From IMG/VR virus record IMGVR_UViG_3300011934_000017, positions 1-64,000 of that record: a stretch of 64,000 bases of DNA. One strand, written 5' to 3'. The notes under the pieces are model-generated. The model was not told the DNA's origin. It saw nothing but the letters and a program-made list of their open reading frames with translations, and made no database searches. Of the stretch, positions 3,431 to 63,242 are shown piece after piece. Position numbers and translations under genes: made by a program. How positions within the stretch are numbered: position 1 is the first letter of the stretch; the number at the start of each line of letters is the position of its first letter.

Positions 3431-3979
3431 ATGGCTATTCTTACAAAACATCAAGGTACCATACGGAGTCTGAGTCGAGAAGATGTAGTCTTTAAACAAG
3501 GCGGTACGACAGTGCCGCCGGAACAAGGACTCATTAAAGTCTCCGATGTTTGGTACCCTCTGTTTCCCGCACTATCTCAAGCACATTGGGGTTATGCTCA
3601 ATACGCCGGACCCGATCTGATTGAAAATGGTTATTTGGGTCCTCAATCGTTCATTGAAGAAAATCTGACTTCACGACTTCCAGTTAAAAGTGGTGAAACT
3701 CTTACGTATAATCTGCCGGACGGTCAAACGTATGCGTACTTTGCCCATCCTGTTTCCTTTGGCGTTGCCTTGTTTACTGATCTAACAAGTAGCTTCCAAG
3801 GTTCGTGGGATGGCGCTAAGTGGTTAGATGACTTTTCTAACTTTGATGAAACTGGTCCTATTGAAGTCACTTTCGACGACGGTACTGGTCCTGCACAATG
3901 GTACGTATATCGTACTGATTGGGCGGGTCCTAGTTCTGATCCTTCACCGTTCCAGATTGATTATCCAAATCAACCTTAA
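3431..3979 (+). CDS. Putative fibre-tip/adhesin protein, WDGA domain
   Basis: RBS aggagg; N-terminal K..G...K.GG...GLIK.S..W.PL motif; C-terminal GSWDGAKW...WYVYRTDW domain shared with 2..2650. Confidence 0.7.
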   Translation: MAILTKHQGTIRSLSREDVVFKQGGTTVPPEQGLIKVSDVWYPLFPALSQAHWGYAQYAGPDLIENGYLGPQSFIEENLTSRLPVKSGETLTYNLPDGQTYAYFAHPVSFGVALFTDLTSSFQGSWDGAKWLDDFSNFDETGPIEVTFDDGTGPAQWYVYRTDWAGPSSDPSPFQIDYPNQP

Positions 3980-3983
3980 CGCT

Positions 3984-4013
3984 CAAAAAGCGGCTCTTTT
4001 GGGCCGCTTTTTG
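3984..4013 (+). terminator. Rho-independent (bidirectional-type) terminator
   Basis: caaaaagcggctc-tttt-gggccgctttttg. Confidence 0.8.
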
Positions 4014-4028
4014 TATCTGGAGATAATA

Positions 4029-4628
4029 ATGTCTGTTATAGTAAAAGACAGCGATGCACTTAAAAACATAACGCCTGCCGAATTTAAAATCAAACACTCT
4101 GGAAATGTAGTATCGCCGTTAAAAGGTTTGCTAAAGCACTCTGGAACGTGGCAACCTCTTTGGGCGGATACGTCTACAGAACCTGACGAACCAGCTACAG
4201 ACTCCCCTCTACCTGCAGGTGTTCCTCGTTGGGGAATTGCGCAATTTGCAGACACAGACTTCACAGGCGGCAAAACTGATCCTAACGCTGACGGTCAGCC
4301 CTATCAGCGCTGGACAGGCCCGCAAGACTTCATTGACACCATGTTGCAGACCTATGATTCGTCTTTGACTGTTACGATGGATGTTCCTTTTCCCGACTAC
4401 GGCTACTTTGCTGTTAAAGCGTCTGATGGTCAAGCTACTTTCTTAGATTCTCAGTACGGCTTTCCAGGTGGTTGGGATGGTGCTCAGTGGGAAGATGGTG
4501 GATTTGGTTCAGAAACTGGGCCTATCACAGTGACTTACGATGACGGTTCCGGACCTGCTCCTTGGCTTGTTTATCGCACAGATTTCTCTGGCATAGGCCA
4601 AATGACGTGGAATGTAACTATTGCATGA
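4029..4628 (+). CDS. Putative fibre-tip/adhesin protein, WDGA domain (paralog of 3431..3979)
   Basis: Start moved from 3828 to ATG 4029 (RBS ggag after the terminator); KHSG...KGLLKHSGTWQPL N-terminus; GGWDGAQW...WLVYRTDF C-terminus. Confidence 0.7.
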   Translation: MSVIVKDSDALKNITPAEFKIKHSGNVVSPLKGLLKHSGTWQPLWADTSTEPDEPATDSPLPAGVPRWGIAQFADTDFTGGKTDPNADGQPYQRWTGPQDFIDTMLQTYDSSLTVTMDVPFPDYGYFAVKASDGQATFLDSQYGFPGGWDGAQWEDGGFGSETGPITVTYDDGSGPAPWLVYRTDFSGIGQMTWNVTIA

Positions 4629-49000: not shown

Positions 49001-50090
49001 TAGCAGTGCTCTGAATAGAGACAGGTGCGGCTGTTTGATCTAGTACCGCCACTTCCTGCGCGTCTGTCACGTTCCAGATAGACTTGTCTTGCTGACACAA
49101 AGCAAACACAGCAGAACCGTTTGAAGTTATACCGAACGGACGGCGACCTACTTCAATAATCTCCACTGCGGAAGAAGTCATATTGATTTTAGCCACAGCG
49201 TCACGTTGAAAAAGTGTGACGTAAACATGGCTGCCCATCTGAACAATTCGAGCAGGCTTACAACTTGGAGGAAGTGCAATTTCCTCTACCGAAGTAGTTA
49301 GATCATTTGCAACATTGATCTTGGTTACAGAATCACTTCCACTGTTAGCTATCCACAATGTATTTCCAACGCTAAGCAAGTCAGAAGGCTGAGAACCTAC
49401 AACAATAGTGTCTGACGGACTGCTATACCCGTTATCTGGAGACAGACGAACCACTTCTCCGCGCTCTAGCGCTACAAAGAAATGGTAAATGTCAGGTTCT
49501 TCACCGCTTACTGCTACTCTTCCTACCGCTACCGGACGCTCTAGCTCGATGCGCTGTTCTAAATCCAAAGAAAGTGGATCGACACGCAACACGCTGTTTG
49601 ACCATCTGTTAGTGATAAACAAATAGTCTTGTTGCAACACCCGATTCTTAGGATTTATTAAGTCAGACGATTGTTGCCAGACAAAAGAAGAGGACATTTT
49701 GTGGAGAGCAACTTCAGAATCGGCTGTCCATGCGTTGTCTCCGATGTGAGACGCATAACCATAAAAATCCAGTGGAAGTATTGGATTGTTCTCGTCAAAT
49801 ACAAGTTGTCCTTGTACTGAAGAAACCACTTCAAAAATAGCCCAACGATTTTCAATCGTAAGGAGAGAATAAACTGACTTACCGATTTCAGGTGCGGTTA
49901 GGCGGACTGCAACGTAGCTGTCGGCTGCTACTGTCGCGCTGTTCTCCACAGAATCTACACCGTTTAGTATCAAGGTGCCTGCTGAAGCTTCTACATAAAC
50001 AAAATCTTCGCTGCTTACGACCTTGATATCATTTGATCTGTACTTGGAACCCGCTGTTCCAATCTTTTTACCTAAAGTAAAAGGTACCAT
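46044..50090 (-). CDS. Large virion protein: YVTN-like beta-propeller, Ig-like repeats, short tandem repeats
   Basis: Start moved to 50090 (the track start lies inside the terminator); VG..P......LW.AN.GS..V..I repeats; F.P...A....Y.S...TISG repeats. Confidence 0.7.
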   Translation of the reverse strand: MVPFTLGKKIGTAGSKYRSNDIKVVSSEDFVYVEASAGTLILNGVDSVENSATVAADSYVAVRLTAPEIGKSVYSLLTIENRWAIFEVVSSVQGQLVFDENNPILPLDFYGYASHIGDNAWTADSEVALHKMSSSFVWQQSSDLINPKNRVLQQDYLFITNRWSNSVLRVDPLSLDLEQRIELERPVAVGRVAVSGEEPDIYHFFVALERGEVVRLSPDNGYSSPSDTIVVGSQPSDLLSVGNTLWIANSGSDSVTKINVANDLTTSVEEIALPPSCKPARIVQMGSHVYVTLFQRDAVAKINMTSSAVEIIEVGRRPFGITSNGSAVFALCQQDKSIWNVTDAQEVAVLDQTAAPVSIQSTANGFVVLDVEQKKSHYLDATYSSVRTFNASSPVETISYDGSVYLFVGAFNAHSQRVSADFYPENFEFDPSFGHDLEETVVSGTYTVSGLNTAAYLSVHSSVASLIVNGQPSSDTWVENGDTVQIQTVSSDRYGVRSAVLVSLGGESTQFITTTVEQKAIPDSVLFTPVDDATPLTEYVSNTVTISGIPTGLSIEASAIDGQLIHNEVIVTGTVLIETGDTVALKLTSGDLDQWRSAVLRIGPISATFAVASEKSVDNTCTASISPIFPYITDVGIRTKVESSIYTATNVNPEPVEISSSYNATMIVDEVDVGTSTVLSYGQQLQLRMEVTAAHSLDHEVVIHSCGKNYTWHAKTEPDRTPEFFSFNNVRDKDANEEVLSEVRTIVGIDSSISVMAEIYPEADVLVNGIRINTLLDYDPEAVLTFPVQLGDTIQIAGRAGSPFGTERKYTLTIGNMVTTYSVRSRPIDGAYERPNNIFLIEVAMGIATAKTGTSKSNVEQYTASPRSETVGREFDAVTPKTHNYGTRAESETSLNAEARRPIITLGDSYSFESRVLRSLDFEGMITIAQEKTTRTGDLGTSEIRRLKSETAEMPDSIIQLKNRKYFDQSESIRNILNRKYFDQPDTVRNFIKRKFFDQPDSIRYYFRSLKQDMPGVDRPHPTHVEYNETSWENPYVHLDHDVYQSYKPRVVTDHLLSEEAQFRMRTVLNFLTLGMSYEEVKRHHTELFESMYAQYNPFPHTEYDALAPIYNPVPFVEFDSLEAQNSSYHLGWVYIDQVFEQQNTAAQSYVFLNQVFQPKNTAAQAYVFLNQDFQILHSSSAVSQFNLQPWKISAGALNTFDGPFAAKLDNHYSTFSAEALKLLWSYVLLEEKEPELKPTDKFTMGPVGNIQRSFTSMDIIPPREVERNSNETFEDEDRTILTSEMMNYASSQEQAYQWAVDAGVDESRIQTYELHPGSWVWAEVLDQPNWCEDIDDSLIDSGWVKGG

Positions 50091-50104
50091 ATCGTCACCA
50101 TAAG

Positions 50105-50133
50105 AAAAAAGGGGATGACTAAGCACCCCCTTT
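50105..50133 (-). terminator. Rho-independent terminator
   Basis: aaagggggtg-cttagt-catcccctttttt on the minus strand. Confidence 0.75.
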
Positions 50134-50166: not shown

Positions 50167-51255
50167 TTACGGAGCAGGTGTTGGAGCAGGAATGCCTGCG
50201 CCTTGAATCAACAGCAGAATACGCATACCGGTGTTGTACTCACCGTTAGCTTGCATTGCTTTATAGGTACGTGGCTCTGATTCGCCGAACACCGTTACGT
50301 TAACGTCAGAGTCTTGCGAGATAACGTCGGCGCTGGTGTAAGCAAGCATATCCAGTTCATGCTTGTATGCACGGCGCTGGGTATTCAAACCACTTGGGAA
50401 GGTGATAATGTACTTGTTATCTACCGATATGGATACTTGCTCTGCAGGATTGATAATCGGATTGATATCACGCTGCGGAACAATGGCAGAAGCAGACTTG
50501 GTAGGTGCGTGAACATCAGTCTCACGCACAACAAAGCGCTGAATACCTTCGGGGTCGATTATGATGCCAGGACTATACTTGCTTGTGGATACTGTGGGGC
50601 CACCACCACCTACAGAATATACGCAGAATACAGGCGCATAGTAATCAGAAAGAATAGTACCGTCAGTAGGATCAACAGGACGCTGAACAACGAACCATGC
50701 AAACTTATCACCAGCGTTGTCGTAAGCGTTACGCCATGCGCAGAACGCAATACCGTGATTCGAAACAGACATACGATAAGACAGAGGCGAAGCACCTTGG
50801 TCTGTACCGTCTTCGGAGTAAAAGTATTCTTCTGACAAGAAAACATTCTCTCGTGCAGAGCTACCACCGTCGAAGTAATCTCCTTTCGGACCAGCAAGAT
50901 TGCCAGAAGTTTTATTTTCAGACTCTGCGGTCACACCACCTCCATCAGAAGGAATCTGGTGCTCAGTACCCATATTGATGCGAATATATCCCTTACCTGC
51001 TAATGCGGAACCATCGGTTTCAATGCGAACGCGCCATTTCTCACCACGGTCTGCAAGCGGATCCATATCCATGTTGGATTCGTAGACAGCCACGTTGGTA
51101 GATGACATAATGCCACCTGTCGGATATAGCAAAGTCATACCACCATCAGCGCCTAGGTCTTCCATAAGCGCTTGCGCCATACCTTGCGCAGAGCCTGTCA
51201 TTGTAGAGCTATTAGTGATACGCGAAAATTCGTGACGTTCTAAAGTAAAGGCCAT
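50167..51255 (-). CDS. Virion structural (fibre/whisker subunit-like) protein
   Basis: Strong codon bias; RBS aaggag; followed by a terminator. Confidence 0.65.
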   Translation of the reverse strand: MAFTLERHEFSRITNSSTMTGSAQGMAQALMEDLGADGGMTLLYPTGGIMSSTNVAVYESNMDMDPLADRGEKWRVRIETDGSALAGKGYIRINMGTEHQIPSDGGGVTAESENKTSGNLAGPKGDYFDGGSSARENVFLSEEYFYSEDGTDQGASPLSYRMSVSNHGIAFCAWRNAYDNAGDKFAWFVVQRPVDPTDGTILSDYYAPVFCVYSVGGGGPTVSTSKYSPGIIIDPEGIQRFVVRETDVHAPTKSASAIVPQRDINPIINPAEQVSISVDNKYIITFPSGLNTQRRAYKHELDMLAYTSADVISQDSDVNVTVFGESEPRTYKAMQANGEYNTGMRILLLIQGAGIPAPTPAP

Positions 51256-52122: not shown

Positions 52123-53202
52123 TCAAAACTGAGTAGACGTGGGAGAAACTGCGTCAGTGGTTGTGGAATCACCAACTTGTCCTAAGTTATTTCTTCCACA
52201 TCCGTAAGTGACAAACTCCGGCAGACAGAACATTGTATTATTCGGACCACAATCTACCCTATCAACACCTGATAGAGAAATAGCAGAAAAAGTGTTTCTA
52301 CTGCTTTTGTCTCCAAGTCCTAACTGTCCGAAAGTGTTAGCGCCAGAAGCAAAAGGAGTGCCTGAAGACTTTAGCAGAACAGAATGATTACCGGATGCTG
52401 CTACTTGCTTAACTCCAGACATAGGAATTGTTGTGATTGTGGAAATCGACATTGTGTTATTTTCAAGACCTAACTGACCTTGAGAATTGAAGCCTGCGCC
52501 TACCAATGTTCCGTCATTCAATAAACAAATCGTATGGGAAGAACCGCAAGCAATCTGTTTTACGTTAGAGAATAAAGAGCTTGTGATAGAGCTTTGGTTG
52601 CTTGTGTTTCCATTTCCTAGCTGACCGAAGTAGTTGTATCCAGCACATTTAACAGAACCGTCAGCCAGCAAGAACATCGTGTAAGAAGCACCTGCTGAAA
52701 TAGCAGCTACATTGGAAATAGGAACATCAACAAGATTAGGTCGATCAGAAACAGAGCCGTCACCTAGTTGTCCGAAGAAGTTTGCACCGCAAGATTTCAC
52801 TGTTCCGTTTTCGAATAAAAACAGCGAATGGTTGCTTCCACACTCTACTTGAACAACGTTTTCTATAGGAAGAATAACAGGTGTTTCTTTGTTAATCTGC
52901 GAACCGTCACCTAATTGACCGGACTGATTTCTACCTACAGTCCGTACAGTTCCATCTTCATAAAGAAAAATCGTGTGATCAGAACCACTAGCAACCTGTT
53001 TGACATTCTGCGAGCGAAGACCGGTCAACGATGTAGGGGACATTACATTCACAAAAGAATCATCGCCTAGCTGACCGTACTCGTTAAAGCCTGCTGCTCT
53101 GGTCGTTGTTTCATCCTTTAGATAGATAGAGTGTTGGCTCCCTATAGCAAACATACTTCTCACAGGAGCTTCTTGTAACGGAGAAACGATCATCATAGGC
53201 AT
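52123..53202 (-). CDS. RCC1/BLIP-II repeat beta-propeller protein
   Basis: Seven repeats of G.N..GQLG.G......P......V.QV..G..HT..L..DG; start moved to 53202. Confidence 0.85.
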   Translation of the reverse strand: MPMMIVSPLQEAPVRSMFAIGSQHSIYLKDETTTRAAGFNEYGQLGDDSFVNVMSPTSLTGLRSQNVKQVASGSDHTIFLYEDGTVRTVGRNQSGQLGDGSQINKETPVILPIENVVQVECGSNHSLFLFENGTVKSCGANFFGQLGDGSVSDRPNLVDVPISNVAAISAGASYTMFLLADGSVKCAGYNYFGQLGNGNTSNQSSITSSLFSNVKQIACGSSHTICLLNDGTLVGAGFNSQGQLGLENNTMSISTITTIPMSGVKQVAASGNHSVLLKSSGTPFASGANTFGQLGLGDKSSRNTFSAISLSGVDRVDCGPNNTMFCLPEFVTYGCGRNNLGQVGDSTTTDAVSPTSTQF

Positions 53203-53203
53203 G

Positions 53204-53629
53204 TTATCTTTCCCACTCCGCAGAAGACCAAGAAGCATCCAAATCAGTATCGTCCACGTTCATACTCGAAGGTTCTTCTTCAACAGGAAATTCTTCTACA
53301 GTCTCTTCCTCTGACTCTTCTGACTCTTCTGACTCTTCTGACTCTTCTGACTCTTCGGGTTCTTCAGTAGATTCCTCTTCTTCATCAGGATCTTCAATAA
53401 AATGCTCTTCACCTATTTGCTTAGGAGGACGCGCGTACTCAGGAACTTCGAGCTTTTTAAGCCCTACGATTCCAGTCACGTCTTCATCTAAAGCGACGAC
53501 TTTTCTACCGTCGTTTAACGTTGCCATATAGTAGTCTTTAGGTAAAGAAGGATTAGCACCTTCAAGAACCTCGAAGTAGAATAACCCAGGATCAAAAAAC
53601 TTATAGATATTTTGAGTTTCCATTATCAT
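53204..53629 (-). CDS. Acidic hypothetical protein with EES repeats
   Basis: ATGA coupling; RBS ggag. Confidence 0.65.
   Translation of the reverse strand: MIMETQNIYKFFDPGLFYFEVLEGANPSLPKDYYMATLNDGRKVVALDEDVTGIVGLKKLEVPEYARPPKQIGEEHFIEDPDEEEESTEEPEESEESEESEESEESEEETVEEFPVEEEPSSMNVDDTDLDASWSSAEWER
53311..53355 (-). repeat. 9-bp tandem repeat x5 (EES)
   Basis: ctgactctt x5. Confidence 0.9.
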
Positions 53630-54099
53630 TCACTCCAAGTATAAAGGCTAGTGTTTTCATTTTCGCGTATAAAGTTTCTATCGAATGCTGTTAAATGATG
53701 TTCAGCGTTTACTGTTTCCACATCTTCGACTTTGTTCATTTCTAAGATACCTGCCATGTCACTTCCATCGGTAGAAGCGTGGGTATCGCCAGCATAAACA
53801 AAAACGTCTCGGTTCAAGAACTTCGGATTAGGATCAACAGAACCGTTTGAGTTTTGACCTACGTCTGCGCTTGTTGCATATAGCATACCCGCAGACGTGA
53901 AAGAAGCCGTTGTAAAGCTTGAATAGAATACGTTAGCATCATTATACAACAAGGTCGATTCGATGGGGCCTATAGCTGAACCTAAATCTACCGGACTCAG
54001 ATTCACAGGCGCAGGCTCTAAATCTTCTAACGGAATTTCTGGTTCCGTCTCTTCAGGTGGTGTCTCTTCCGGCGGCGTCTCTTCAGTTGTTTCAGACAT
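53626..54099 (-). CDS. Hypothetical virion-associated protein
   Basis: RBS ggag; EETPP repeats at the N-terminus. Confidence 0.65.
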   Translation of the reverse strand: MSETTEETPPEETPPEETEPEIPLEDLEPAPVNLSPVDLGSAIGPIESTLLYNDANVFYSSFTTASFTSAGMLYATSADVGQNSNGSVDPNPKFLNRDVFVYAGDTHASTDGSDMAGILEMNKVEDVETVNAEHHLTAFDRNFIRENENTSLYTWSE

Positions 54100-54104: not shown

Positions 54105-55028
54105 TTACTCCGGAATTGCGAATCTACAGTCGGCAGAACCTGTAGTTAAAACGTGGTGATCGCGTGTCGTGGCACCGTTAGCATCGTAGAATTTCTCACC
54201 ATCTACACGAATGTTTATCTTATCCATAACACTACCTATAGCGCGAGGAAGAATCTTCAATCCGTACACACGGCCTCGAACCCAACCATGACGACGATCT
54301 ACTTGGTACGGTGTGTACACTTGAGTTGCAGCAGTAGGTGACATAGGATTAGAGCCTGTAGGAAGCACAGTGTACAGTCTTCCCGCGTTATCATGCGTTG
54401 AACCTACTGCGGTAGCAAGAGCTTGATATTCCCAAGCATTACTACTTATTTGTCCGAAAGAGTCTCTCGGATAAGCACAACACCGCGCACGGTTTGAAGA
54501 TGTAGCGTGAGCCCCGATAGCTCCTTCACCTGTCATCCAAACGTAAAGCGGAAACTCCCCTGCAATCTCTTCAGGATTATCACGCGCAATTTCAAATACG
54601 CCTGTCCACGTGTTGTTGTTTGTGCATCCCCATACGTCACCGGCAATACGGGACAGCAACACGATATAACGAGCAGAGGCAAATATAAACAAGTTGCCTC
54701 CGTTAGCGAAATCGTACCTCTGGTGGTGCGTAGCAGACCCGGAGTAGTACGTTACATTGGTCCCTTCTGTTGTTTCAGGATTCCAAAACTCCCAAGCAGA
54801 AAGATAGATGTACTCCGAACGCATATCGATCTGGATATACTTTTGACTGATGCCGTCGCGCATTGGAGCGCGATAGATAATGTTGGTATCAGAAATCTTT
54901 TGCATGGTTTGCCAACCAAGGCTGCTAAGAGAAACCCGAAGCACTTCAGAAAGATTGGCTTCAGTCTCTCTAGGAGAGTACGAAAGAGAAATCGAGTTCT
55001 CTCCTAATGTACCTACAGTAATAGCCAT
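54105..55028 (-). CDS. Fibre-family paralog (G.NS...Y / KY..ID / RG..YG.K.L family)
   Basis: Aligns end to end with 55631..56563 and 62241..63242. Confidence 0.7.
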   Translation of the reverse strand: MAITVGTLGENSISLSYSPRETEANLSEVLRVSLSSLGWQTMQKISDTNIIYRAPMRDGISQKYIQIDMRSEYIYLSAWEFWNPETTEGTNVTYYSGSATHHQRYDFANGGNLFIFASARYIVLLSRIAGDVWGCTNNNTWTGVFEIARDNPEEIAGEFPLYVWMTGEGAIGAHATSSNRARCCAYPRDSFGQISSNAWEYQALATAVGSTHDNAGRLYTVLPTGSNPMSPTAATQVYTPYQVDRRHGWVRGRVYGLKILPRAIGSVMDKINIRVDGEKFYDANGATTRDHHVLTTGSADCRFAIPE

Positions 55029-55040
55029 AAAAAACTCCTG

Positions 55041-55622
55041 TTAGAAAGACCCGCCTGTCCATAAATAGTTCGGTCGAGCTTTCTGCTGTGTGAATGTGTC
55101 AAAAGAAATATAATCAAGCAACACGTTACTGTTTATCGGTACGTTGTAGTACACAACATCGGAATAGTGTTCGCCAAACTTGTGGATATCAGAGCTACCT
55201 CCGAACACACTATGTTCAACGTTTGAATAATCGGTGCCGATAGAATAGTTTGCTAGAACAGTGTAGTGGAAGCCAAGAATGTGATTCAAATCCACTTTCA
55301 TGGAAGCTAACATGGATATGTTACTGAAAAACGTATTTTCAGAAAAACCTATAGCCGACGTATGTATTAGACCTTCTAGGGGAAGATCAAAGACGTCCAT
55401 GAAATAGACGGAATGTGACGTGTTTTGGTATACTGTACCAGGAGAAAACGTGAAGTCATTCGAATAGAAACCATAAAGAGAAGGGTACTGCTCAAACAAG
55501 TGTTGCCAAGTTTGAGACAGTACGACCCCTGTTATGATATTCACATTCAAAAAAGACTCTGATTCTAAAGGAGAGTCTCCTTCATCGTTCAGCCCTCCTG
55601 TACCAGGAGCAAGCTGAGCCAT
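55041..55622 (-). CDS. Hypothetical virion-associated protein
   Basis: RBS gaggtg; aromatic-rich. Confidence 0.65.
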   Translation of the reverse strand: MAQLAPGTGGLNDEGDSPLESESFLNVNIITGVVLSQTWQHLFEQYPSLYGFYSNDFTFSPGTVYQNTSHSVYFMDVFDLPLEGLIHTSAIGFSENTFFSNISMLASMKVDLNHILGFHYTVLANYSIGTDYSNVEHSVFGGSSDIHKFGEHYSDVVYYNVPINSNVLLDYISFDTFTQQKARPNYLWTGGSF

Positions 55623-55630
55623 TTTTCACC

Positions 55631-56563
55631 TCAAGAAGGAATTGCGAAACGAACGTTGTTGGCACAGGTTAGAATGTGGTGATCAACAGCTTCTCCGTCA
55701 GGGGAGTAGAACGCATCAGTATCACAATTAATGCTGATCTTATCTAAGAATGAACCCATATTTCGGCTCAAGAACTTCATGCCGTAGAAGCGCCCACGCA
55801 GATTGAATGTACCGTTATACTGGGTTGTTTCATAGGCAAAAGGCGTCAGTACAAAAATGTTGTTGTTAGCACCTAACGGATTGGTACCTTGAGGTAACAT
55901 TTCATATAGACGTGCGTTTGAACTCCAAGTAAGTCCAGCTACGGTGCTGATCGTCATTGGACGGTGTGCGTTATAACCTGTAGCGTCAAAGGGTGTGCGC
56001 GGCACAGAGAATGCAGTAGGGTAACTAGAGGACGCATGAAAGCCTACTGCACCATGGCCGTGAACCCATCCGTAGATAGGAAACTCACCGGCTACTTCGT
56101 CTTTGTTGTCCCGCGCAATCTCAATGCAGCCGTTCCAAGACTCGCCGTTAGTAGAACCAAGAGAACCGTCGTTGATGCGTGACTGTGAAATTAACCAACG
56201 TGCTGTTGCGAAGATGTATAGGTAGCCGCTATACTCAAGACTGAGGCGTTGAGAATATGTGTGTGTAACTCCATACTCAGCTTCATTTGTTCCGCTGTGT
56301 GTTTCTGCGTCCCAAGATTCGTACACACGAATGCTAAAGTAAGAAGCGTGGTTAGTATCCAACATAACGTACTTGTAGGAAGAAGCATCCGCATTTAGAG
56401 CACGATACACGCGCATGTGGGTTCCAGCTTCCTTGTCAAAGGCTTCCCAACCTTTGGTAATGATAAACGCTTCAACGCCGTCCAGAATTTCTTCTTGTGT
56501 TGCGTTGATGGAATAGTTAAGTGCAATAGAGTTAGGACCGATTGCAGTTGTCTTAGTTGACAT
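55631..56563 (-). CDS. Fibre-family paralog
   Basis: EIARDN..E.AGEFP.Y.W and DKI.I..D...FY...G...DHH.LT...RFAIP shared with 54105..55028. Confidence 0.7.
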   Translation of the reverse strand: MSTKTTAIGPNSIALNYSINATQEEILDGVEAFIITKGWEAFDKEAGTHMRVYRALNADASSYKYVMLDTNHASYFSIRVYESWDAETHSGTNEAEYGVTHTYSQRLSLEYSGYLYIFATARWLISQSRINDGSLGSTNGESWNGCIEIARDNKDEVAGEFPIYGWVHGHGAVGFHASSSYPTAFSVPRTPFDATGYNAHRPMTISTVAGLTWSSNARLYEMLPQGTNPLGANNNIFVLTPFAYETTQYNGTFNLRGRFYGMKFLSRNMGSFLDKISINCDTDAFYSPDGEAVDHHILTCANNVRFAIPS

Positions 56564-56578
56564 AAGGTAGTTCCTCTT

Positions 56579-59500
56579 TTATAAAGGTAGGGCCATGCAG
56601 CCACCGCGTGAGTTTCGAACAACAAAGTGTTGTGTTAAATCTAAAGAGCTTAGATCATAAAATCCATCTTCATCCACAGGAATTTCGATTGTGTCCCTGC
56701 TATATCCAATTTTGTTTTCTAGCAGCTTCAGTCCAAAGAAGCGTCCTCTTACGTGTGCATTTTCCGGATCGCTGCATACAGCAGTAGGTGAAATAGCGAA
56801 AGTACCTCCGTTTCCTTTTGGAATAAAGTCGTCTAGGTAAAGACGCCATTCTCCAGAATACGATTGGTGATTAACAGCGTAGTAGTAGTAATAACCGCCA
56901 CCATAACTTCTTCTGCGGCGCCTTCTTATACACCCAATGTAGGCATAGGCCACTGTGTTAAAAGTAGGCGCTTGGAAGTGAGACATAACAGCAAAGGAAG
57001 AAGCATTCTGTCCAACCGCATTTCTCAAGTCCCGAGGCAGAGAATAAGCGTATATTTCGTTTCGACTCATATCCCCTATGCGCTTAGGTTGAAGCGTTCC
57101 ATAACAAACGTCTCCTTGTACCCAAGCAAACAACGGAAACTCTCCAGGATATTCCATCTCCATCAGCTTTTCTATTTCGAAACAGCCAACGAAGGATGGT
57201 TTTAACTCTGAAGACAAGTCTGAAAAGAACGCTAACCAACGAGGATTAACAAACATCATCAACGAGTCTTCACCAGAAGAACGTAGACGTTGTGTATAAC
57301 CTAGATCGTCCGACATGTACGCTAGATTGGTTCCTACATGGAATCTAGGATCCCAGTATTCGAACACTTTGAACTCAAGGTAGTTGTTTCGAATATCAAG
57401 CAACACGTACTTGTAACCACCGTATTCACAAGGAGCGCGAAAGCAAGAGCGTGGTCTTCCATCCATTGAAAGTCCGACCGGTATAACATCTGATTCCCAT
57501 TCTTTTTCGACTTCTGTTAAGAAATTAGAGTGAATGGGCGTACTGGTTACTTGACTGTCTTCGTCTCTTCCCCAAGTAACAAGTTTTCCTGAAGCGTTCA
57601 TTACGATGAAATGCCCTACACCTGCTTCAATGTAATCGAACGGACCTTGCGGAATTAGACCGCGGTCAAAGGACAGATCGCCCCAGACTGCAATAGTCCC
57701 ATCGTCACGAAGCGCACCACAGAAATTGGTACCGGCTGCTATCGCTTTAAACGTACCTGTTGGTGTGTCGGACACCTCACCGTTAGAGTCTTCACCCCAA
57801 ACAACTAGCGTACCGTCGGTGCGTAGTGCTATGGTGTGCTTCTCTCCGCAGTCAACGTCGAGAAAGTATCCAGAAGGTGCCTTAGAAACGTGCCCGTCAC
57901 CGTCAAATCCCCATACGTATAGCTCATTCTGATAGGTAATTGCGGCGCTTTGATAACGAGAAGCTGCAATTTTCACAAACGGATTTAGAACAGCAGTTGC
58001 TTCGTCTGGAGAACCACCAATCTGTTTGAATGTGTTATCACCCCACACGCGAATGACACCATTACTATCGAGCGCCATGCTGTGTGCGCTGCCTGCCGCT
58101 ACTTGAACGTACCCCTCACCCAAAGGTTTATTGGTTATCTGATTCTGACCATCATTTCCCCAACCTACGATAGAGCCAGAGTCTGTCAGAGCTAGAGCAT
58201 GAAACTGACCAGAAGCTACAGCTTTGAACCTACCTGTCGGAACGTTTCCTACTTCTCCGTACAAGTCTCGACCCCAAGCTTCGATTTCAAAAGCACTATT
58301 GATCGCTAGATTATGCCAAGAAGCAGAAATAGGTTGTTCAGGCTTAACGATATCTGGGAACGTGATCGGATATTCGTAGTTATTTCCTTCTACAGTAGAC
58401 GTAGTTACTTCCCCCACTTCCACGTAGCTGTGCTCAGGCAGAGCTATGGAGAGCTTGTTCATTTGCTCGCCTACCACAGGTACTTGAACAGTTACTTCAC
58501 GCCATATCAGATCTGGTGGAATGCACGTTAAGTCAGGAAAAACACCTAGCAGCATTTCAATTTCAGGGACTGAAGAGTAAGAGCCTGGAGCAGGTGCACC
58601 GGGAACATCAGACGATACAGCATCCTCTAAGACAATATTGCCACCGTTCTTAAACGCAATTTCTATATTTAGAAATGTTTTGTCCAAAAATAAGGAAGCG
58701 TAAGGAGTGCTCGACAGTGTGACGTTTACGCTAGACACTCGAAGAGCTAAGCGTTCTGGATTGTCAACGCCCGAGAATTGGAAAGCATCTACAAACTCTC
58801 CGCCTAGCGTGACACCGTAGACGGTGAACACTCGACTGTCTAGGGAATCGACTTCGAACGTGTTGTTACCGGAAAATGAAAGCGTTAGAGGATCAAATAA
58901 AGCTAACTCAGTCTTTATGATTCCGTCTTGAAAAGCACCGCTCGTATTCTTTAGGACAAAGACATTCTCAGAAGCTAAGTCATCCACAAGTGCCGGTAAA
59001 AAGTGAGAAGACGTACCAATCGCAATGTAACGTAGAGGTAGCCCTGATTTTACTTCAATGGAAGAACCAGGATTAGAAGCTTCAGTTGCCGCAAATAAGC
59101 TACCATCTATCTGACCTATAAGCGAAACTTCGTTAGGTGTCTGCCCCGCAGAATGAACGTCAACAAGATTGATTGTTTCATCGACGATTGCTTCGGTTCC
59201 TTCTTGTGAAGCACTAACGATGGTGCCGAACTCATTAACATTGATCGTAATAGGTCCTGAAGTATTGCCGCCAAAGCTAAGCTTGTTATCGATCAGGCCA
59301 ATAATGAACTCTGGTGGTGGAACGAACTCAAGGTTAGGTGAAAGCAGTGGAATTAAAGCTTGTGCTTGTTGCGCATCGTAAACACCTGCAGATGGAACAC
59401 CTTCAACGTCATCTGAAATCACGTCGTGAAGAGTTACCGTCTTGTCCGCTCCTTCAAGTGCTTGGAACGAAAAGCTCAGGTCGATGAAGGTCTTATCAAC

Positions 59501-61702
59501 AAAGACAGAACTATAGTTACTGGCGCTTTGAACAACAGTTGCACCTGTAAGACGATTAGCTAGATTATCTTCCGCTACGTTCAAAAGGCGCAGTATGTCG
59601 GAACCTTCACCAATACCTAAAGTGATGCCGTACACGTTCAGAGAAGAATCATTTTCTCCGTCAATTTTCACCGTGGTCTGTGAAGTTATTTCGTTTAAGC
59701 TTTCTACGGTATAGAAGGAAAAGCCGGACTTGCGCACACCACTACTAAAAGCATCAGTCCCATTCTTTAAGACAAATACATTGGGTTCAGAAATTTCAGT
59801 AATAGAAGACGGTAAGTAAATGGCTTGATTGCCAAACAACACTTCTCGAAATGTCTTTCCGGCACTTTTTATACCGACGACAGAATCCGCGTCAAACAAG
59901 GAAAGATCGACTGTACCAGAAAACGAAAATGTTGGTGATCCTGAAACAGATACGCTGTGAATGTCAGTCAAAGGAATTGGTGTAGACAGTTCAACTGAAA
60001 TCAGTTCCCTTTCTGCTCCTACAACTCCTGCGTCTGTGACTGAAAGTTCAATATCTCCGATTGCAGTGCCTTCGATTCTTAACTCGTTATCTACCAGAGT
60101 TAAATACAGCGAAGGTGGTGGAGTATAGACGATATTGTTAGACAACATGGTCACAAAATCGTCGGTAACAGGAGGTTCGTACAAACCTGCAGGAGGCACT
60201 CCTGGTACATCATCTGAAATGATGTTTACCAAACGTACTTTCTTTGTGTGTCCCAAGAAAGAGGTAATAGATATATCGAGAGTAATGTAGCTTTTATCTA
60301 AAAATAAGCCAGAGTACGCTTCAGTCCCTTCTTCGATTAGGACTTGCTCAATTCTGTCAGCAAGTCCCGACTCTTCCACATATATGAAGTCGAGTAGGTC
60401 AGCCCCTGCTCCGGTTCCCAACGTTGTGCCGTATATCGTGAGGTCTGAGTTGTTTCGTGTATCTATATCAACGGTGAGACCAGACGTAACAACATCAATA
60501 GAGCTACGTGTATAAATGGAGAAACCTTGCTTTAGAGCGTTATTTTCTAAAGCGTCTGTTCCATTCTTTATGGCAAATACGCCAGGTGTTCCCAACATAT
60601 CAACTGTAGCTGGTGCGTAAAGCTCGATAGATTCTGCCGCGATCTTTCGGAATACTTTGCCCAGCACAGCAGTTCCAGGTGCAGTACCTTGATCAAACAG
60701 GGAAGCATCCGTAACACCGGAAGCATTGAGCGTTATGCCTGTATCTACAAAGCTGCGAATGTCATTTAGATTGTATTGTCCAGAGTTTGATGCTTCAACG
60801 CCTTCGCGTGTAGCGAACAACTGTCCAGAAACGTCGAAGTATAAATTTACAGGACCAGTAGCAGTGCCGGAAAAACTAATTGCTCCTGCATTCAGATCAG
60901 CCTCAAAGGTAGGTGGCGGAACATCGTAAATAACGTTCTGCTCCACCATAGGAACAAATGACGTAGCCTGCTGACCTGTGTATGTTCCTACAGGAGGAGC
61001 ACCTGTGGCATCACTCGCTATAGTAGCATACAATGTAATGTAGGTCTGCGTTGCTTCTTTTACAAACGTTAGCGTTATATCAAGGAAGGTCTTAGCTAAA
61101 AAGATGTCCTTGTATTTGCTTGTGTTTTCCGCAACAACGACCTTTGTCAAAAGATTTTCAAGATCACCTGCGTATACGTTCTTGAAAAACAAAGAGTCAG
61201 CGCTAGTGCCTGTTCCAAAGTTGAAGCCGTGAAACTCGTAGTCGGATCCATTTAGGACAACTTCACGCTCACTTTGAACAGCCAAAGTCTGCAAGGAAGT
61301 TGAGGTATAGATCGAAAACCCTTGCTTAGTGTCGCCTTCAATTTGTGTATCCGAAAACGTCTTCACAACGAATACGGACACATCTTGAGTGGGGTCACTA
61401 TTAGCGGGTAGATAGTACGTGTCTTGTCCAAAAACTACTGGACGAAACGCTTTACCCAGAATAGAGAAAGAAGGTTGCCAAGTAAATTCAACAGAGCCTG
61501 AGACAGTCAGATCAAGTTCTGAAGGAAACGTGACTGATCGAATATCCTCAATTCGAATATTGGTTACTTCAGTTCGTGTTCCTTGTGTGACGGTCAACAA
61601 GCCTGTAGTTTCAAAGACTACGCTTACGGCTTCAGTATTGTAATCGGAGAACGAAAGATTGCCCGTTCCGTCCAATGTTGCTTTTATTTGACTATCAGCC
61701 AT
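56579..61702 (-). CDS. 1707-aa fibre protein: four ~265-aa repeats, RCC1 propeller, C-terminal fibre-family domain
   Basis: Repeats K.GFSIYT...YG.TLG.G...LFLDKTF...SDDV.G.P; G..H.LAL...G....WG RCC1 units; C-terminal YKYVLLD...RGRFFGLKLL. Confidence 0.8.
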   Translation of the reverse strand: MADSQIKATLDGTGNLSFSDYNTEAVSVVFETTGLLTVTQGTRTEVTNIRIEDIRSVTFPSELDLTVSGSVEFTWQPSFSILGKAFRPVVFGQDTYYLPANSDPTQDVSVFVVKTFSDTQIEGDTKQGFSIYTSTSLQTLAVQSEREVVLNGSDYEFHGFNFGTGTSADSLFFKNVYAGDLENLLTKVVVAENTSKYKDIFLAKTFLDITLTFVKEATQTYITLYATIASDATGAPPVGTYTGQQATSFVPMVEQNVIYDVPPPTFEADLNAGAISFSGTATGPVNLYFDVSGQLFATREGVEASNSGQYNLNDIRSFVDTGITLNASGVTDASLFDQGTAPGTAVLGKVFRKIAAESIELYAPATVDMLGTPGVFAIKNGTDALENNALKQGFSIYTRSSIDVVTSGLTVDIDTRNNSDLTIYGTTLGTGAGADLLDFIYVEESGLADRIEQVLIEEGTEAYSGLFLDKSYITLDISITSFLGHTKKVRLVNIISDDVPGVPPAGLYEPPVTDDFVTMLSNNIVYTPPPSLYLTLVDNELRIEGTAIGDIELSVTDAGVVGAERELISVELSTPIPLTDIHSVSVSGSPTFSFSGTVDLSLFDADSVVGIKSAGKTFREVLFGNQAIYLPSSITEISEPNVFVLKNGTDAFSSGVRKSGFSFYTVESLNEITSQTTVKIDGENDSSLNVYGITLGIGEGSDILRLLNVAEDNLANRLTGATVVQSASNYSSVFVDKTFIDLSFSFQALEGADKTVTLHDVISDDVEGVPSAGVYDAQQAQALIPLLSPNLEFVPPPEFIIGLIDNKLSFGGNTSGPITINVNEFGTIVSASQEGTEAIVDETINLVDVHSAGQTPNEVSLIGQIDGSLFAATEASNPGSSIEVKSGLPLRYIAIGTSSHFLPALVDDLASENVFVLKNTSGAFQDGIIKTELALFDPLTLSFSGNNTFEVDSLDSRVFTVYGVTLGGEFVDAFQFSGVDNPERLALRVSSVNVTLSSTPYASLFLDKTFLNIEIAFKNGGNIVLEDAVSSDVPGAPAPGSYSSVPEIEMLLGVFPDLTCIPPDLIWREVTVQVPVVGEQMNKLSIALPEHSYVEVGEVTTSTVEGNNYEYPITFPDIVKPEQPISASWHNLAINSAFEIEAWGRDLYGEVGNVPTGRFKAVASGQFHALALTDSGSIVGWGNDGQNQITNKPLGEGYVQVAAGSAHSMALDSNGVIRVWGDNTFKQIGGSPDEATAVLNPFVKIAASRYQSAAITYQNELYVWGFDGDGHVSKAPSGYFLDVDCGEKHTIALRTDGTLVVWGEDSNGEVSDTPTGTFKAIAAGTNFCGALRDDGTIAVWGDLSFDRGLIPQGPFDYIEAGVGHFIVMNASGKLVTWGRDEDSQVTSTPIHSNFLTEVEKEWESDVIPVGLSMDGRPRSCFRAPCEYGGYKYVLLDIRNNYLEFKVFEYWDPRFHVGTNLAYMSDDLGYTQRLRSSGEDSLMMFVNPRWLAFFSDLSSELKPSFVGCFEIEKLMEMEYPGEFPLFAWVQGDVCYGTLQPKRIGDMSRNEIYAYSLPRDLRNAVGQNASSFAVMSHFQAPTFNTVAYAYIGCIRRRRRRSYGGGYYYYYAVNHQSYSGEWRLYLDDFIPKGNGGTFAISPTAVCSDPENAHVRGRFFGLKLLENKIGYSRDTIEIPVDEDGFYDLSSLDLTQHFVVRNSRGGCMALPL

Positions 61703-62231
61703 TTGTTGTGTCTCCTGTTGTATCAGGGTCTGGCTCAGGTGCAGGGTCTGGCTCAGGTGCAGGGTCTGGCTCAGGTGGCGGTGGCGGTGGCGGTGGCGGT
61801 AACGGTGTGCTGTCTAAGAGAACAGATACAGACGATCCATCGTTAGTTGAGACTTCCAAAGCGTAGTCAGAACCTTCTGGGACACCGTATCGAATAGTGA
61901 CCTCTATCATACCGCTAACGTCTGATTCAATAGACTTGTCGATAGAAGATCCTTCGTTTTCGAAAAGCACGGTGTCTACTTTTTTCCAGGGCGTTCCAAC
62001 AACGTTAAAGGTTGTCGAATCTAGCACATAGTTAGGAGCACTAAACAACGAGTCTTCGGGAACAGGAGCGTTGATCACTTCGATGGTTTCAAGAACACCG
62101 TCCCATAAACGCCAACCGCGTTGTATTAACTCCTTATACATTTCCAAAAACAAAGCACTGTGAGAGTCTTCCCCAGCTATATACGAAAACTTTAAAGAGT
62201 TCTCGCCTTGCGGTTCAATTTCAATGGCCAT
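61695..62231 (-). CDS. Protein with a fibre-family N-terminal segment and a Pro-rich tail
   Basis: QGENSLKFSY...RGW matches the paralog N-termini; ends in poly-P and PEPDPA repeats. Confidence 0.7.
   Translation of the reverse strand: MAIEIEPQGENSLKFSYIAGEDSHSALFLEMYKELIQRGWRLWDGVLETIEVINAPVPEDSLFSAPNYVLDSTTFNVVGTPWKKVDTVLFENEGSSIDKSIESDVSGMIEVTIRYGVPEGSDYALEVSTNDGSSVSVLLDSTPLPPPPPPPPPEPDPAPEPDPAPEPDPDTTGDTTNG
61724..61800 (-). repeat. 18-bp x3 (PEPDPA) plus poly-Pro microsatellite
   Basis: cagggtctggctcaggtg x3 followed by (gcggtg)n. Confidence 0.9.
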
Positions 62232-62240
62232 ATTCTATCC

Positions 62241-63242
62241 TCACACAGGGATTAAAAAGCGGTCAGAAGTGGAGCCGACAAACATGTGATCTTTGTATTC
62301 TCCCTTCTTAGAAGGAAAATAATCATCTTTTGTTTTATATGGAATTATAGACGTTACAACACCATATCGAGACTGTACGCTTTTTATTCCATATACATTA
62401 CCCACTAAGTCTATACCGTTGTTTATTTCAATCAAAGAAATAGGTGACACCATAGGTGCTCGGGACAATCGATTTCGAGACTCGAAGAAACGAATAGGTC
62501 CTCCATACCAGAATGAACGGTATCTTGTAGTATAGCGAGAACTATTCCAGTTACAAGATGTGATTCTTTCTACTTGATACCAGTGAGGTTGTGCCATAGG
62601 GTCATTAACACTGACATAATAATATCTATAACTGGAGTTGGTAGACCCTGATAGCGACAGCGGAAAAGAGGCGCTTTGCGTCTTATTTATATCGATATCG
62701 TTTCCAGTCATTCTACCTGACAAATGATGACCGTCTGTCCAACAAAACTTGGAAGTGCCTCGCGTCTGAAGCTCGAAGCAACCGCTCCATGTGCTTCTGC
62801 GATTACCGTACGTTTGGTAGCCAGAATCATTCGATATGTCGGAGAACATTGCTAGCCAACGAGAATGCACGAAAACAAACATCGCACCACCGTAACCAGA
62901 AGTGTCTATAACTTGCTGATGGTAGTTCCAACTGTCTAAAGCACAGACGTTTTGAAGTGACGTGGAACCTTCTGCTGCACCGTCTCCTACTTCCAAGCGT
63001 AACATATTAGCACCGCTATTAACGACGCTTAGCCTTACATATTTATAGGTTTCACCGTCGGCGCAAAGAGCTTTTAGAATTTTGGGATTGTTATTGCCCG
63101 GAGAGCTATCGTGATGCATGACCCAACCGTGTTCACCTTCAATAATAACACGACATATCTCAGGTAAAAGTAAATCATTTCCCTCTTGTGGATCAGCGTA
63201 TTCGAAGCGATACGAATTAGGACCGTAGGGAATTACTTTCAT
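62241..63242 (-). CDS. Fibre-family paralog
   Basis: YGPNSY.F.Y, YKYVRL, FV.SRWL, WSGCFE, VYGIK. Confidence 0.7.
   Translation of the reverse strand: MKVIPYGPNSYRFEYADPQEGNDLLLPEICRVIIEGEHGWVMHHDSSPGNNNPKILKALCADGETYKYVRLSVVNSGANMLRLEVGDGAAEGSTSLQNVCALDSWNYHQQVIDTSGYGGAMFVFVHSRWLAMFSDISNDSGYQTYGNRRSTWSGCFELQTRGTSKFCWTDGHHLSGRMTGNDIDINKTQSASFPLSLSGSTNSSYRYYYVSVNDPMAQPHWYQVERITSCNWNSSRYTTRYRSFWYGGPIRFFESRNRLSRAPMVSPISLIEINNGIDLVGNVYGIKSVQSRYGVVTSIIPYKTKDDYFPSKKGEYKDHMFVGSTSDRFLIPV

What the first reader, a model, noticed from the sequence alone, without database searches (positions are those of the whole stretch)
56579..62231. Fibre domain apparently split across two genes with ~1,500 aa inserted between the halves
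Seen: the family's first ~44 aa (G.NS...Y, helix, GW..D) begin the 178-aa protein 61695..62231, which lacks the rest. The remainder (R..RA...YKYV.LD through RGR.FG.K.L...LP) ends the next gene, the 1707-aa protein, which lacks that N-terminal segment. Between them lie a poly-Pro linker, four ~265-aa repeats and an RCC1 propeller. The genes overlap by 8 nt and the second has its own AGGAG RBS. Inference: two polypeptides rebuild one docking domain in trans, displaying a giant insert as a loop or branch, like a natural split-domain or donor-strand system.
Basis: partly seen in the sequence, partly recalled or inferred. Interest (0 to 1): 0.6.

Follow-up and report, generated by a model that had tools for sequence, protein, structure and literature searches.

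The report
Phage fibre gene split in two
In this 220-kb phage, one tail-fibre building-block gene that carries a giant insert has broken into two overlapping genes, and the two products most likely snap back together to rebuild a single folded domain.

Summary
The 178-aa protein (61695-62231, minus strand) carries only the first ~47-55 residues (two strands, a helix, a third strand) of a ~310-aa family. That family has three intact paralogs next door. The 1707-aa protein (56579-61702) carries only the remaining ~290 residues, at its C-terminus, after four ~265-aa repeats and an RCC1 propeller.

The family has no Pfam or PHROG model. Its fold matches the fibre-forming proteins gp47/gp48 of the phage JBD30 baseplate (Z 17.3).

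- **Fused relatives:** in five other phage lineages the gene at the same position is one polypeptide, with a variable insert at or next to the same hairpin.
- **Derived split:** in a tree, the split pair nests inside these fused orthologs, so the split arose later.
- **Real and old:** two runs' contigs agree at the junction. A relative with saturated synonymous divergence keeps the stop, the AGGAG and the ATG.
- **Both pieces selected:** the N-segment is 91% identical between the two phages; the C-domain has dN/dS of about 0.08.
- **Predicted binding:** a complex model scores ipSAE 0.88 against a best control of 0.01, with native-like strand pairing.

This is a conserved gene fission inside one domain with fragment complementation. 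It is a new variant of a known kind. Binding itself is predicted, not shown.

The parts
61695..62231 (-). Gene 1: the 178-aa protein (P0001), the N-terminal piece of the split fibre-subunit gene
   Evidence: ORF list, translation, N-segment profile hit E 4e-11
62067..62231 (-). N-segment, residues 1-55: strand 1, strand 2, helix 1 and strand 3 of the family fold (G.NS..Y, helix, GW..WD)
   Evidence: Alignments A1 and A4. Intact-paralog model has strands at 3-9, 12-17 and 40-47 and a helix at 23-35. 91% identical to the relative's copy while pS = 0.74
61788..62057 (-). Middle domain of the 178-aa protein (residues 59-148), all-beta by sequence, fold not determined
   Evidence: 60% identical to the relative P0162. 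No Pfam or PHROG hit. Atlas leads are below useful scores
61698..61787 (-). Poly-Pro / PEPDPA linker tail (residues 149-178) that now ends the 178-aa protein
   Evidence: Translation and DNA. Logan contigs break here and differ only by an in-frame 18-nt unit
61695..61716 (-). Junction: AGGAG (61712-61716), 9-nt spacer, ATG of gene 2 (61700-61702), TGA of gene 1 (61695-61697), followed in frame by TAG
   Evidence: The same layout (AGGAG, 9 nt, ATG, stop at the TAG) is kept in relative L006. A contig with 0 differences spans it in two runs
56579..61702 (-). Gene 2: the 1707-aa protein (P0002), made of cargo plus the C-terminal piece of the split domain
58508..61702 (-). Four tandem ~265-aa repeats (residues 1-1065)
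   Evidence: BLASTP of units, 27-38% identity; alignment A6. AF2 model has pLDDT 70.5 and only weak fold matches, Z <= 5.2
57521..58234 (-). RCC1-like beta-propeller (residues ~1157-1394)
   Evidence: PF25390 E 2e-43 and PF13540 E 3.8e-36
56582..57520 (-). C-part of the family domain (residues 1395-1707; profile match from 1418), from strand 4 to the C-terminal ..LPL
   Evidence: C-part profile E 5e-69. Profile positions 52-303 only. dN/dS about 0.08 against the relative. Predicted to bind the N-segment
62241..63242 (-). Intact paralog, 333 aa
   Evidence: Both profiles hit in one ORF; alignments A1 and A3
55631..56563 (-). Intact paralog, 310 aa (the one modelled)
   Evidence: AF2 pLDDT 87.5, pTM 0.89. 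Match to 8rk3 at Z 17.3, rmsd 3.3 A, 249 residues aligned
54105..55028 (-). Intact paralog, 307 aa

Best explanation
A fibre-subunit gene has undergone fission inside a single compact domain.

The ancestral gene encoded a ~310-aa domain of the JBD30 gp47/gp48 type. Its strand 3/strand 4 hairpin had become a landing site for very large, fast-changing inserts, probably host-binding cargo such as RCC1 propellers and repeats.

In the lineage of this phage, a stop and a start codon arose at the end of a proline-rich linker inside the insert. Two proteins are now made from overlapping, translationally coupled genes:
- a 178-aa protein: N-segment, a small domain and a Pro-rich tail;
- a 1707-aa protein: four repeats, an RCC1 propeller and the C-part of the domain.

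The N-segment then inserts non-covalently into the C-part. Strand 3 pairs with strand 4, strand 2 pairs with the strand at 1479-1483, and the helix packs on strand 5. This rebuilds the complete domain, which takes its place in a fibre built from the four paralogs. The cargo projects from it as a branch.

Shown: the anatomy, the fused orthologs, the derived and conserved split, and purifying selection on both pieces. Predicted: the trans-assembly. Inferred: the fibre location and the host-binding role.
For: - **Complementary pieces:** the two ORFs cover non-overlapping, complementary parts of the family profile.
- **Fused orthologs:** positional orthologs in other phages are single chains carrying both parts. 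They are L007 (921 aa), L008 (1539 aa), L013 (997 aa), L015 (~700 aa) and L012 (470 aa). In my profile scan of the window and 15 fetched loci, only this lineage lacks one part in an uncut ORF.
- **Derived state:** in the ML tree of C-parts, the split pair (100/100) nests within fused L007+L008 (100/99), with fused L013 as sister (83/90).
- **Not an artefact:** a contig with 0 differences spans the junction plus 51 nt of linker frame in two runs at depth ~30-36. The only repeat ambiguity is an in-frame 18 nt.
- **Split kept in a relative:** the relative from another sample (L011+L006) keeps the stop at the same TAG, AGGAG, the 9-nt spacer and the ATG. Synonymous sites are saturated between the two phages (pS 0.72-0.82).
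- **Selection:** the N-segment is 91% identical (dN 0.08). The C-part is 82% identical (dN 0.128, dS 1.6).
- **Predicted complex:** ipSAE 0.88/0.88/0.86 against a best control of 0.01. That mark was reached by 58 of 80 solved complexes and 2 of 110 mismatched pairs. The partner pLDDT is at least 74 and the runs agree in at least 72% of contacts. There are 169 contacts, with strand 3 (WRLWD 40-44) on SCFRAP 1419-1424 and strand 2 (14-17) on 1479-1483.
- **Fold:** Z 17.3, rmsd 3.3 A over 249 residues to JBD30 baseplate chain 8rk3_c; the next hit is Z 6.2. Foldseek gives E 1.9e-5. In JBD30, gp47/gp48 heterodimers form the fibres (PMC11445458).
Against: - No protein-level data exist: no proteomics, RNA or structure.
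- A structure predictor given the two halves of a known family, with alignments cut from intact members, is expected to reassemble the fold. The high score therefore shows compatibility, not assembly in the cell. The tool itself says its calibration holds only roughly with user alignments.
- It is odd for a protein to end in a 30-residue Pro-rich linker, which hints at a covalent connection.
- The stem branch leading to the split C-part is long (1.07 against 0.25-0.78 for the other paralog pairs). This could mean adaptation or a changed function.
- Only two genomes of the split lineage are known.
Confidence: 0.75

Rival explanations
1. Programmed +1 ribosomal frameshifting or a similar recoding event in or after the proline-rich linker makes a single ~1,880-aa fused protein. 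This would happen always or in a fraction of translations. The two-gene appearance would then be partly an annotation illusion.
For: - ORF2's frame is open for 37 codons upstream of its ATG, across the whole linker (open frame 1744 aa).
- Polyproline runs are known to stall ribosomes (general knowledge).
- The 178-aa protein ends in a linker, as if something should follow.
Against: - The open +1 frame is explained by composition: CCN, GAG and GAC codons cannot give stops in that frame.
- No recognisable slippery site sits at the stop. The window has AAT GGC TGA TAG and the relative has AAT GGC GGA TAG.
- A canonical AGGAG, 9-nt spacer and ATG are conserved in both phages, which suits coupled re-initiation.
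Confidence: 0.08
2. The 178-aa gene is a decaying leftover. The 1707-aa protein's C-domain works without the N-segment, either truncated or completed by its own lead-in sequence.
For: - The stem branch of the split C-part is long, which could reflect remodelling to fold alone.
- The lead-in E-K-E-W-E-S-D aligns by eye with the G-W-x-x-x-D of strand 3 in one MAFFT alignment.
Against: - The N-segment is the best-conserved part of the 178-aa protein: 91% identity against 60% for its middle domain, with synonymous sites saturated.
- The ORF is intact in both phages.
- The N-segment profile finds nothing in the 1707-aa protein.
- Fused orthologs have the same lead-in (V-L/I-P-V-G) in addition to a true N-segment.
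- In the intact model the N-segment has pLDDT 92-98 and is an integral part of the fold.
Confidence: 0.07
3. Sequencing or assembly error: an indel in the repetitive linker falsely breaks one gene.
For: - The break lies next to an 18-nt tandem repeat and a CCGCCA run, where assemblers fail. Logan contigs end there.
Against: - The frame change lies between the last PEPDPD codons and the ATG. That stretch is unique sequence covered by one contig with 0 differences in two runs at ~30-36x.
- The repeat ambiguity is 18 nt, which is in frame.
- A relative with 71% amino-acid identity from another sample has the same split.
Confidence: 0.02

Closest known systems
JBD30 gp47/gp48 tail-fibre-forming proteins (PDB 8rk3; PMC11445458)
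   Same: - Same fold: Z 17.3, rmsd 3.3 A over 249 residues.
- About 300 aa.
- Occur as paralogs that are similar to each other.
- In JBD30, three gp47-gp48 heterodimers build each lateral fibre arm of the baseplate.
   Different: - Only ~11% sequence identity.
- JBD30 is a siphophage with two paralogs. This is a 220-kb phage with sheath genes and four paralogs.
- No insert-bearing or split member is described for JBD30.
- Heterodimer formation was not tested here.
Split nrdA of Aeromonas phage Aeh1, 'genes in pieces' (PMC3045599)
   Same: A phage gene for one protein is broken into two genes, and their products reassemble non-covalently into a working unit.
   Different: - In Aeh1 the break is caused by an inserted homing-endonuclease gene. 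Per that paper's title, assembly uses interaction domains derived from the mobile element.
- Here no mobile element lies between the genes; they overlap by 8 nt.
- Here the break sits in a cargo linker, and the reassembled unit is one small domain whose two parts are ~1,500 residues apart.
Donor-strand complementation in chaperone-usher pili (general knowledge)
   Same: An incomplete beta-structure in one polypeptide is completed by strands from another polypeptide.
   Different: - Pilins lack one C-terminal Ig strand, and the donor is the next subunit, which gives a polymer.
- Here three strands plus a helix of a non-Ig fold are supplied by a dedicated partner, with 1:1 stoichiometry expected.
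- Fused orthologs exist here.
Domain-insertion ('nested domain') proteins and engineered split-protein complementation (general knowledge)
   Same: - The fused orthologs are classic nested-domain proteins, with a guest inserted in a hairpin of the host domain.
- The split form behaves like a natural split-protein pair.
   Different: - The guest is exceptionally large (110 to ~1,400 aa) and turns over between related phages.
- The fission occurred in the guest, not in the host domain.

Membership tests
JBD30 gp47/gp48-like fibre-forming subunit family | Shared three-dimensional fold over most of the ~300-aa protein | tested here: met
   VIA Z 17.3, rmsd 3.3 A, 249 residues aligned to 8rk3_c, next hit Z 6.2. 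Foldseek E 1.9e-5 and 5.6e-5, TM 0.52-0.53, to 8rk3 chains K and G. The query model has pLDDT 87.5
JBD30 gp47/gp48-like fibre-forming subunit family | Two or more paralogs encoded together in the tail/baseplate gene block | tested here: met
   Three intact paralogs plus the split one lie within 54105-63242. Neighbours include a sheath-like protein (phrog_12249, E 9.8e-83), an RCC1 protein with a weaker tail-protein PHROG hit, and a protein matching a virion-structural-protein PHROG
JBD30 gp47/gp48-like fibre-forming subunit family | Paralogs form heterodimers that stack into a fibre on the baseplate | not tested
This needs cryo-EM or pull-downs
JBD30 gp47/gp48-like fibre-forming subunit family | Detectable sequence homology | tested here: not met
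   About 10-12% identity in the structural alignments. No Pfam or PHROG model hits the family. The relationship rests on fold only
Gene fission with fragment complementation (split protein) | Orthologs exist in which both parts are one polypeptide | tested here: met
   L007, L008, L013, L015 and L012. The tree places the split pair inside them
Gene fission with fragment complementation (split protein) | The two ORFs carry complementary, non-overlapping parts, and both are maintained by selection | tested here: met
   Profile scan. N-segment dN 0.08 at pS 0.74. C-part dN/dS about 0.08
Gene fission with fragment complementation (split protein) | The two products physically associate and rebuild the fold | tested here: inconclusive
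   The model supports binding: ipSAE 0.88 against a best control of 0.01. That mark was reached by 58 of 80 solved complexes and 2 of 110 mismatched pairs. The partner pLDDT is at least 74 and the runs agree in at least 72% of contacts. This is a prediction only, and my own alignments were used
Donor-strand complementation system | Ig-like fold lacking one strand, completed by a neighbouring subunit to give a polymer | tested here: not met
   The fold is not Ig-like. The missing part is three strands plus a helix
Split intein / protein trans-splicing | Hint/intein domain halves flanking the break | tested here: not met
   No Pfam hit of any kind in the 178-aa protein, and only RCC1 families in the 1707-aa protein at E <= 0.01. 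The junction residues are ...TNG and MADS...
Programmed ribosomal frameshift gene | Conserved slippery site, usually with a stimulator, at the frame change | tested here: inconclusive
   No known +1 motif was seen at the stop in either phage. Instead an AGGAG, 9-nt spacer and ATG are conserved. I inspected by eye only and have no expression data

The most novel reading that the evidence does not exclude
The fission is adaptive rather than merely tolerated.

Cutting the chain inside the cargo turns a fibre subunit into a two-part system. A small, highly conserved 'key' protein (the N-segment) licenses folding and incorporation of a giant receptor-binding 'lock' protein after translation. This frees the 53-residue N-segment from waiting for ~1,800 residues to be synthesised. 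It also lets the cargo gene be exchanged as a cassette with its own start codon.

More broadly, the strand 3/4 hairpin of this widespread, unnamed fibre-subunit family (at least 854 cluster representatives) would be a natural display site. It tolerates guests from ~110 to ~1,400 residues and even a broken chain.
Probability: 0.2. Interest if true: 0.7.

Novelty: new variant of a known kind. Interest (0 to 1): 0.5.

Why it matters
- **Protein evolution:** this is a clean natural case in which a single small domain is rebuilt from two gene products whose parts were ~1,500 residues apart in the ancestral chain. Fused and split forms are both available in related phages for direct comparison.
- **Phage biology:** it points to an unnamed but widespread family of fibre subunits, with at least 854 cluster representatives and no Pfam or PHROG model. 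One paralog acts as a scaffold for fast-changing, very large host-recognition cargo.
- **Engineering:** the hairpin and the natural split site suggest where foreign binding modules could be displayed on such fibres, and give a ready-made complementation pair.

It is not a new principle. Gene fission with non-covalent reassembly is already known in phages, for example the split nrdA of phage Aeh1.

Tried and rejected
**Searches that found nothing**
- Phage GenBank collection: megablast of the locus, and tblastn with the 178-aa and 310-aa proteins, found no relatives. The only hit was a 32-nt proline-repeat match to Escherichia phage kvi, which is low-complexity chance.
- Pattern scans of IMG/VR with the 178-aa protein, the C-domain and the repeat alignment found nothing.
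- A word-based protein search with the 178-aa protein found no homolog. I reached the relative's copy through the neighbouring 333-aa paralog instead.
- ESM Atlas look-alikes for the repeat unit gave no usable hit. For the 178-aa protein all scores were under 0.8, which makes them leads only. The Atlas's own model of that protein alone is poor (pTM 0.21, pLDDT 0.38), which is weak evidence at best.
- The repeat-unit fold (AF2, pLDDT 70.5) gave only weak matches. The first ~50 residues look Ig-like and the rest looks beta-roll/RTX-like, with Z <= 5.2. I do not name its fold.

**Ideas rejected**
- An apparent N-terminally truncated family member (P0086) turned out to be a mis-called start of a fused 470-aa ORF.
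- An apparent C-part-only ORF in L015 has a divergent N-segment visible by eye.
- The resemblance of 'INAP...NYVLDS' in the 178-aa protein to strands 4-5 of the family is chance. The fused ortholog P0010 matches the 178-aa protein up to about residue 53 and then runs into its own RCC1 insert, which points to that boundary.
- Split intein: rejected, no Hint domain.

**Technical note**
- Two self-BLAST attempts for the repeats returned only the identity hit, so I ran the units separately.
Full report
**Setting.** The window is the first 64 kb of a 220,237-bp viral record with direct terminal repeats, rated 100% complete. The locus is held by two stromatolite-metagenome runs that are probably its source. 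The minus strand from 44 kb to 64 kb is a block of structural genes. It includes a sheath-like protein (phrog_12249), RCC1 proteins with weaker tail-protein PHROG hits, and a protein matching a virion-structural-protein PHROG.

**The observation.**
- The 178-aa ORF (61695-62231) and the 1707-aa ORF (56579-61702) overlap by 8 nt (ATGGCTGA). AGGAG lies 9 nt before the ATG, and ORF2 is in the +1 frame.
- Three intact paralogs of 307, 310 and 333 aa lie at 54105-55028, 55631-56563 and 62241-63242. They are the only other copies in the genome.
- I cut 70 family members, together with the split and fused insert-bearing proteins, at the strand 3/4 hairpin and built one profile for each half. The N-segment profile hits only the 178-aa protein (residues 1-46, E 4e-11). 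The C-part profile hits only the end of the 1707-aa protein (1418-1707, E 5e-69).
- An exhaustive profile search gives the same picture: the large protein matches profile positions 52-303 only.
- The four repeats (27-38% identity), the RCC1 propeller and the Pro-rich linker are confirmed.

**What the family is.**
- It has no Pfam or PHROG model but is large. The profile search found 854 cluster representatives at E <= 1e-3 and 560 at E <= 1e-10, mostly ~300 aa.
- An AlphaFold2 model of the 310-aa paralog is confident (pLDDT 87.5, pTM 0.89). The N-segment forms strand 1 (3-9), strand 2 (12-17), a helix (23-35) and strand 3 (40-47), all at pLDDT 92-98.
- The only strong match among solved structures is the phage JBD30 baseplate. 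Foldseek gives E 1.9e-5. VIA gives Z 17.3, rmsd 3.3 A over 249 residues, with the next hit at Z 6.2.
- From their lengths (305 and 317 aa) and the paper's note that gp47 and gp48 share one fold, I take these chains to be gp47 and gp48; I did not check the chain assignment. Three gp47-gp48 heterodimers build each lateral fibre arm there and contact the type IV pilus (PMC11445458).
- Predicted viral structures with the same fold include three proteins with consecutive UniProt accessions (A7KUT2-4). They also include virion structural proteins of several phages.
- So 'fibre domain' is a fair name. Membership rests on fold, not on sequence.

**Relatives show the fused state.**
- I found related phage contigs through the 310-aa paralog. 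Gene order is conserved: 333-like paralog, insert-bearing gene, 310-like paralog, a small gene, then a 307-like paralog.
- In L007 the second gene is one 921-aa protein. It has the N-segment, two RCC1 regions, then the C-part.
- In L008 it is 1539 aa, with RCC1, dozens of short repeats and RCC1 between the two parts.
- In L013 it is 997 aa. In L015 it is ~700 aa with RCC1.
- L012 has two members with ~110-aa inserts.
- In most of these the insert enters at the strand 3/4 hairpin. In L013 (P0053), and in the unrelated hit P0073, it enters one loop earlier, between the helix and strand 3.
- In the profile scan of the window and 15 fetched loci, only the window and its close relative lack one part in an uncut ORF.
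- A maximum-likelihood tree of C-parts puts the split pair (100/100) inside a clade with fused L007 and L008 (100/99), with fused L013 as sister (83/90). The fission is therefore derived.

**The split is real and old.**
- In both runs that hold the locus, a contig of 8,427 nt covers 60900-61753 without a difference. This span includes the stop, the start and 51 nt of the linker's reading frame. Depth is ~30-36.
- Contigs break only at the 18-nt PEPDPA repeat, and the one length difference is 18 nt, which is in frame.
- These runs may be the source of the window, so they check the assembly, not the biology.
- Independent support comes from another sample (SRR29340318). Contig L011 carries the 334-aa paralog and then a homolog of the 178-aa protein, running into the proline repeat at the contig end.
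- Contig L006 starts in the same repeat in the same frame. It reaches a stop at the TAG that follows the window's TGA, and it has AGGAG, a 9-nt spacer and the ATG of the large gene.
- The two phages are far apart. The large proteins are 71% identical and synonymous sites are saturated (pS 0.72-0.82).
- The N-segment is 91% identical (dN 0.08), while the middle domain of the same protein is 60% identical. The C-part is 82% identical with dN/dS of about 0.08.
- Both pieces have thus been kept by selection since before the two phages diverged.

**Do the pieces fit?**
Each chain had an alignment of the matching halves of family members.
- The model supports binding but does not show it. The score was 0.88, 0.88 and 0.86 in three runs, and the best of three controls scored 0.01.
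- That mark was reached by 58 of 80 solved complexes and 2 of 110 mismatched pairs. The counts hold only roughly because my own alignments were used.
- The runs agree in at least 72% of contacts, and the partner pLDDT is at least 74.
- The contacts are those expected from the intact fold. Strand 3 (WRLWD, 40-44) lies on SCFRAP (1419-1424, strand 4). Strand 2 (14-17) lies on 1479-1483, which aligns with the 113-119 strand of the paralog. The helix lies on YVLLD.
- Any predictor shown two halves of a known domain will tend to rejoin them. This result shows that the halves remain compatible, not that they assemble in the cell.

**Mechanism proposed.**
- The two genes are translated from one message, with coupling at the overlapping stop and start.
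- The N-segment completes the C-part after translation. The rebuilt domain joins the other paralogs in a baseplate fibre.
- The repeats and the RCC1 propeller project as a branch that probably contacts the host.
- The fibre location and host binding are inferred from the JBD30 fold match and from how variable the insert is.

**Rivals.**
- *Recoding to a fused chain* cannot be excluded without protein data. There is no slippery site, the conserved ribosome-binding site and ATG argue for a separate start, and the open +1 frame over the linker follows from its codon composition.
- *A decaying N-piece* is contradicted by its conservation.
- *An assembly error* is contradicted.
- *A split intein* is excluded by the absence of any Hint domain.

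**Comparison with known systems and novelty.**
- Phage genes in pieces whose products reassemble are known, for example the nrdA of phage Aeh1 split by a homing endonuclease gene (PMC3045599).
- Three things differ here. The break lies inside a giant guest insert, so a single ~340-residue host domain must be rebuilt from a 53-residue piece and a 290-residue piece. No mobile element is involved. Fused orthologs with other guests exist side by side.
- I rate it a new variant of a known kind, of moderate interest.
- The unexplained points are the long stem branch of the split C-part and the dangling proline tail.

Noticed in passing
L008:5360-9979 (P0011, residues ~440-1090): The fused ortholog in L008 carries, between two RCC1 regions, a very long array of ~17-aa units of the type P-A-V-L-A-x-G-G-E-I-V-x-P-G. 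This is a different guest from the one in the window. It shows how fast the insert turns over.
   Followed up: no
window 56582-57520 versus L006 (tree): The stem branch leading to the C-part of the split proteins is long: 1.07 changes per site, against 0.25-0.78 for the other three paralog pairs. Evolution seems to have accelerated around the time of the fission.
   Followed up: partly
window 56840-56900 region (P0002 residues ~1606-1625): There is an odd low-complexity loop in the C-domain: a run of six Arg, then S-Y-G-G-G and five Tyr. It lies where the family is most variable and where the paralog model has its lowest confidence. The relative has a different sequence there.
   Followed up: no
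window 52123-53238 (-): This is a free-standing 371-aa RCC1 propeller protein in the same gene block (phrog_7220, E 1.3e-81). RCC1 modules therefore occur both as an insert and as a separate gene in this fibre region.
   Followed up: no
window 50167-51255 (-): This 362-aa protein matches a 'tail sheath' PHROG in its C-terminal 200 residues (phrog_12249, E 9.8e-83). The main sheath gene lies far away on the other strand (20440-22029, phrog_23, E 1.3e-92). It is a second, sheath-like protein inside the fibre block.
   Followed up: no
window 46044-50126 (-): This 1360-aa protein has no family hit. It contains short tandem motifs (R-K-Y/F-F-D-Q-P/S-D/E and V-F-L-N-Q-x-F-Q) near residues 950-1200.
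   Followed up: no
window 53204-54099 (-): Two small overlapping genes encode very acidic repeat proteins (E-E-S-E-E-S... and E-E-T-P-P-E-E-T...) between the RCC1 gene and the 307-aa paralog.
   Followed up: no
L012:1892-3304 and 3314-4516: A gene caller had started one family member at an internal Met (P0086, 360 aa). The full ORF is 470 aa with an N-segment and a ~110-aa insert, and the next gene is a second insert-bearing member. Database entries of this family can look N-terminally truncated when they are not.
   Followed up: yes
window 61759-61790: The only hit of the locus in the phage GenBank collection is 32 nt of CCGCCA proline repeat. It is shared with a repeat region of a receptor-recognition protein of Escherichia phage kvi. 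This is low-complexity coincidence, though both are linkers in host-recognition proteins.
   Followed up: no
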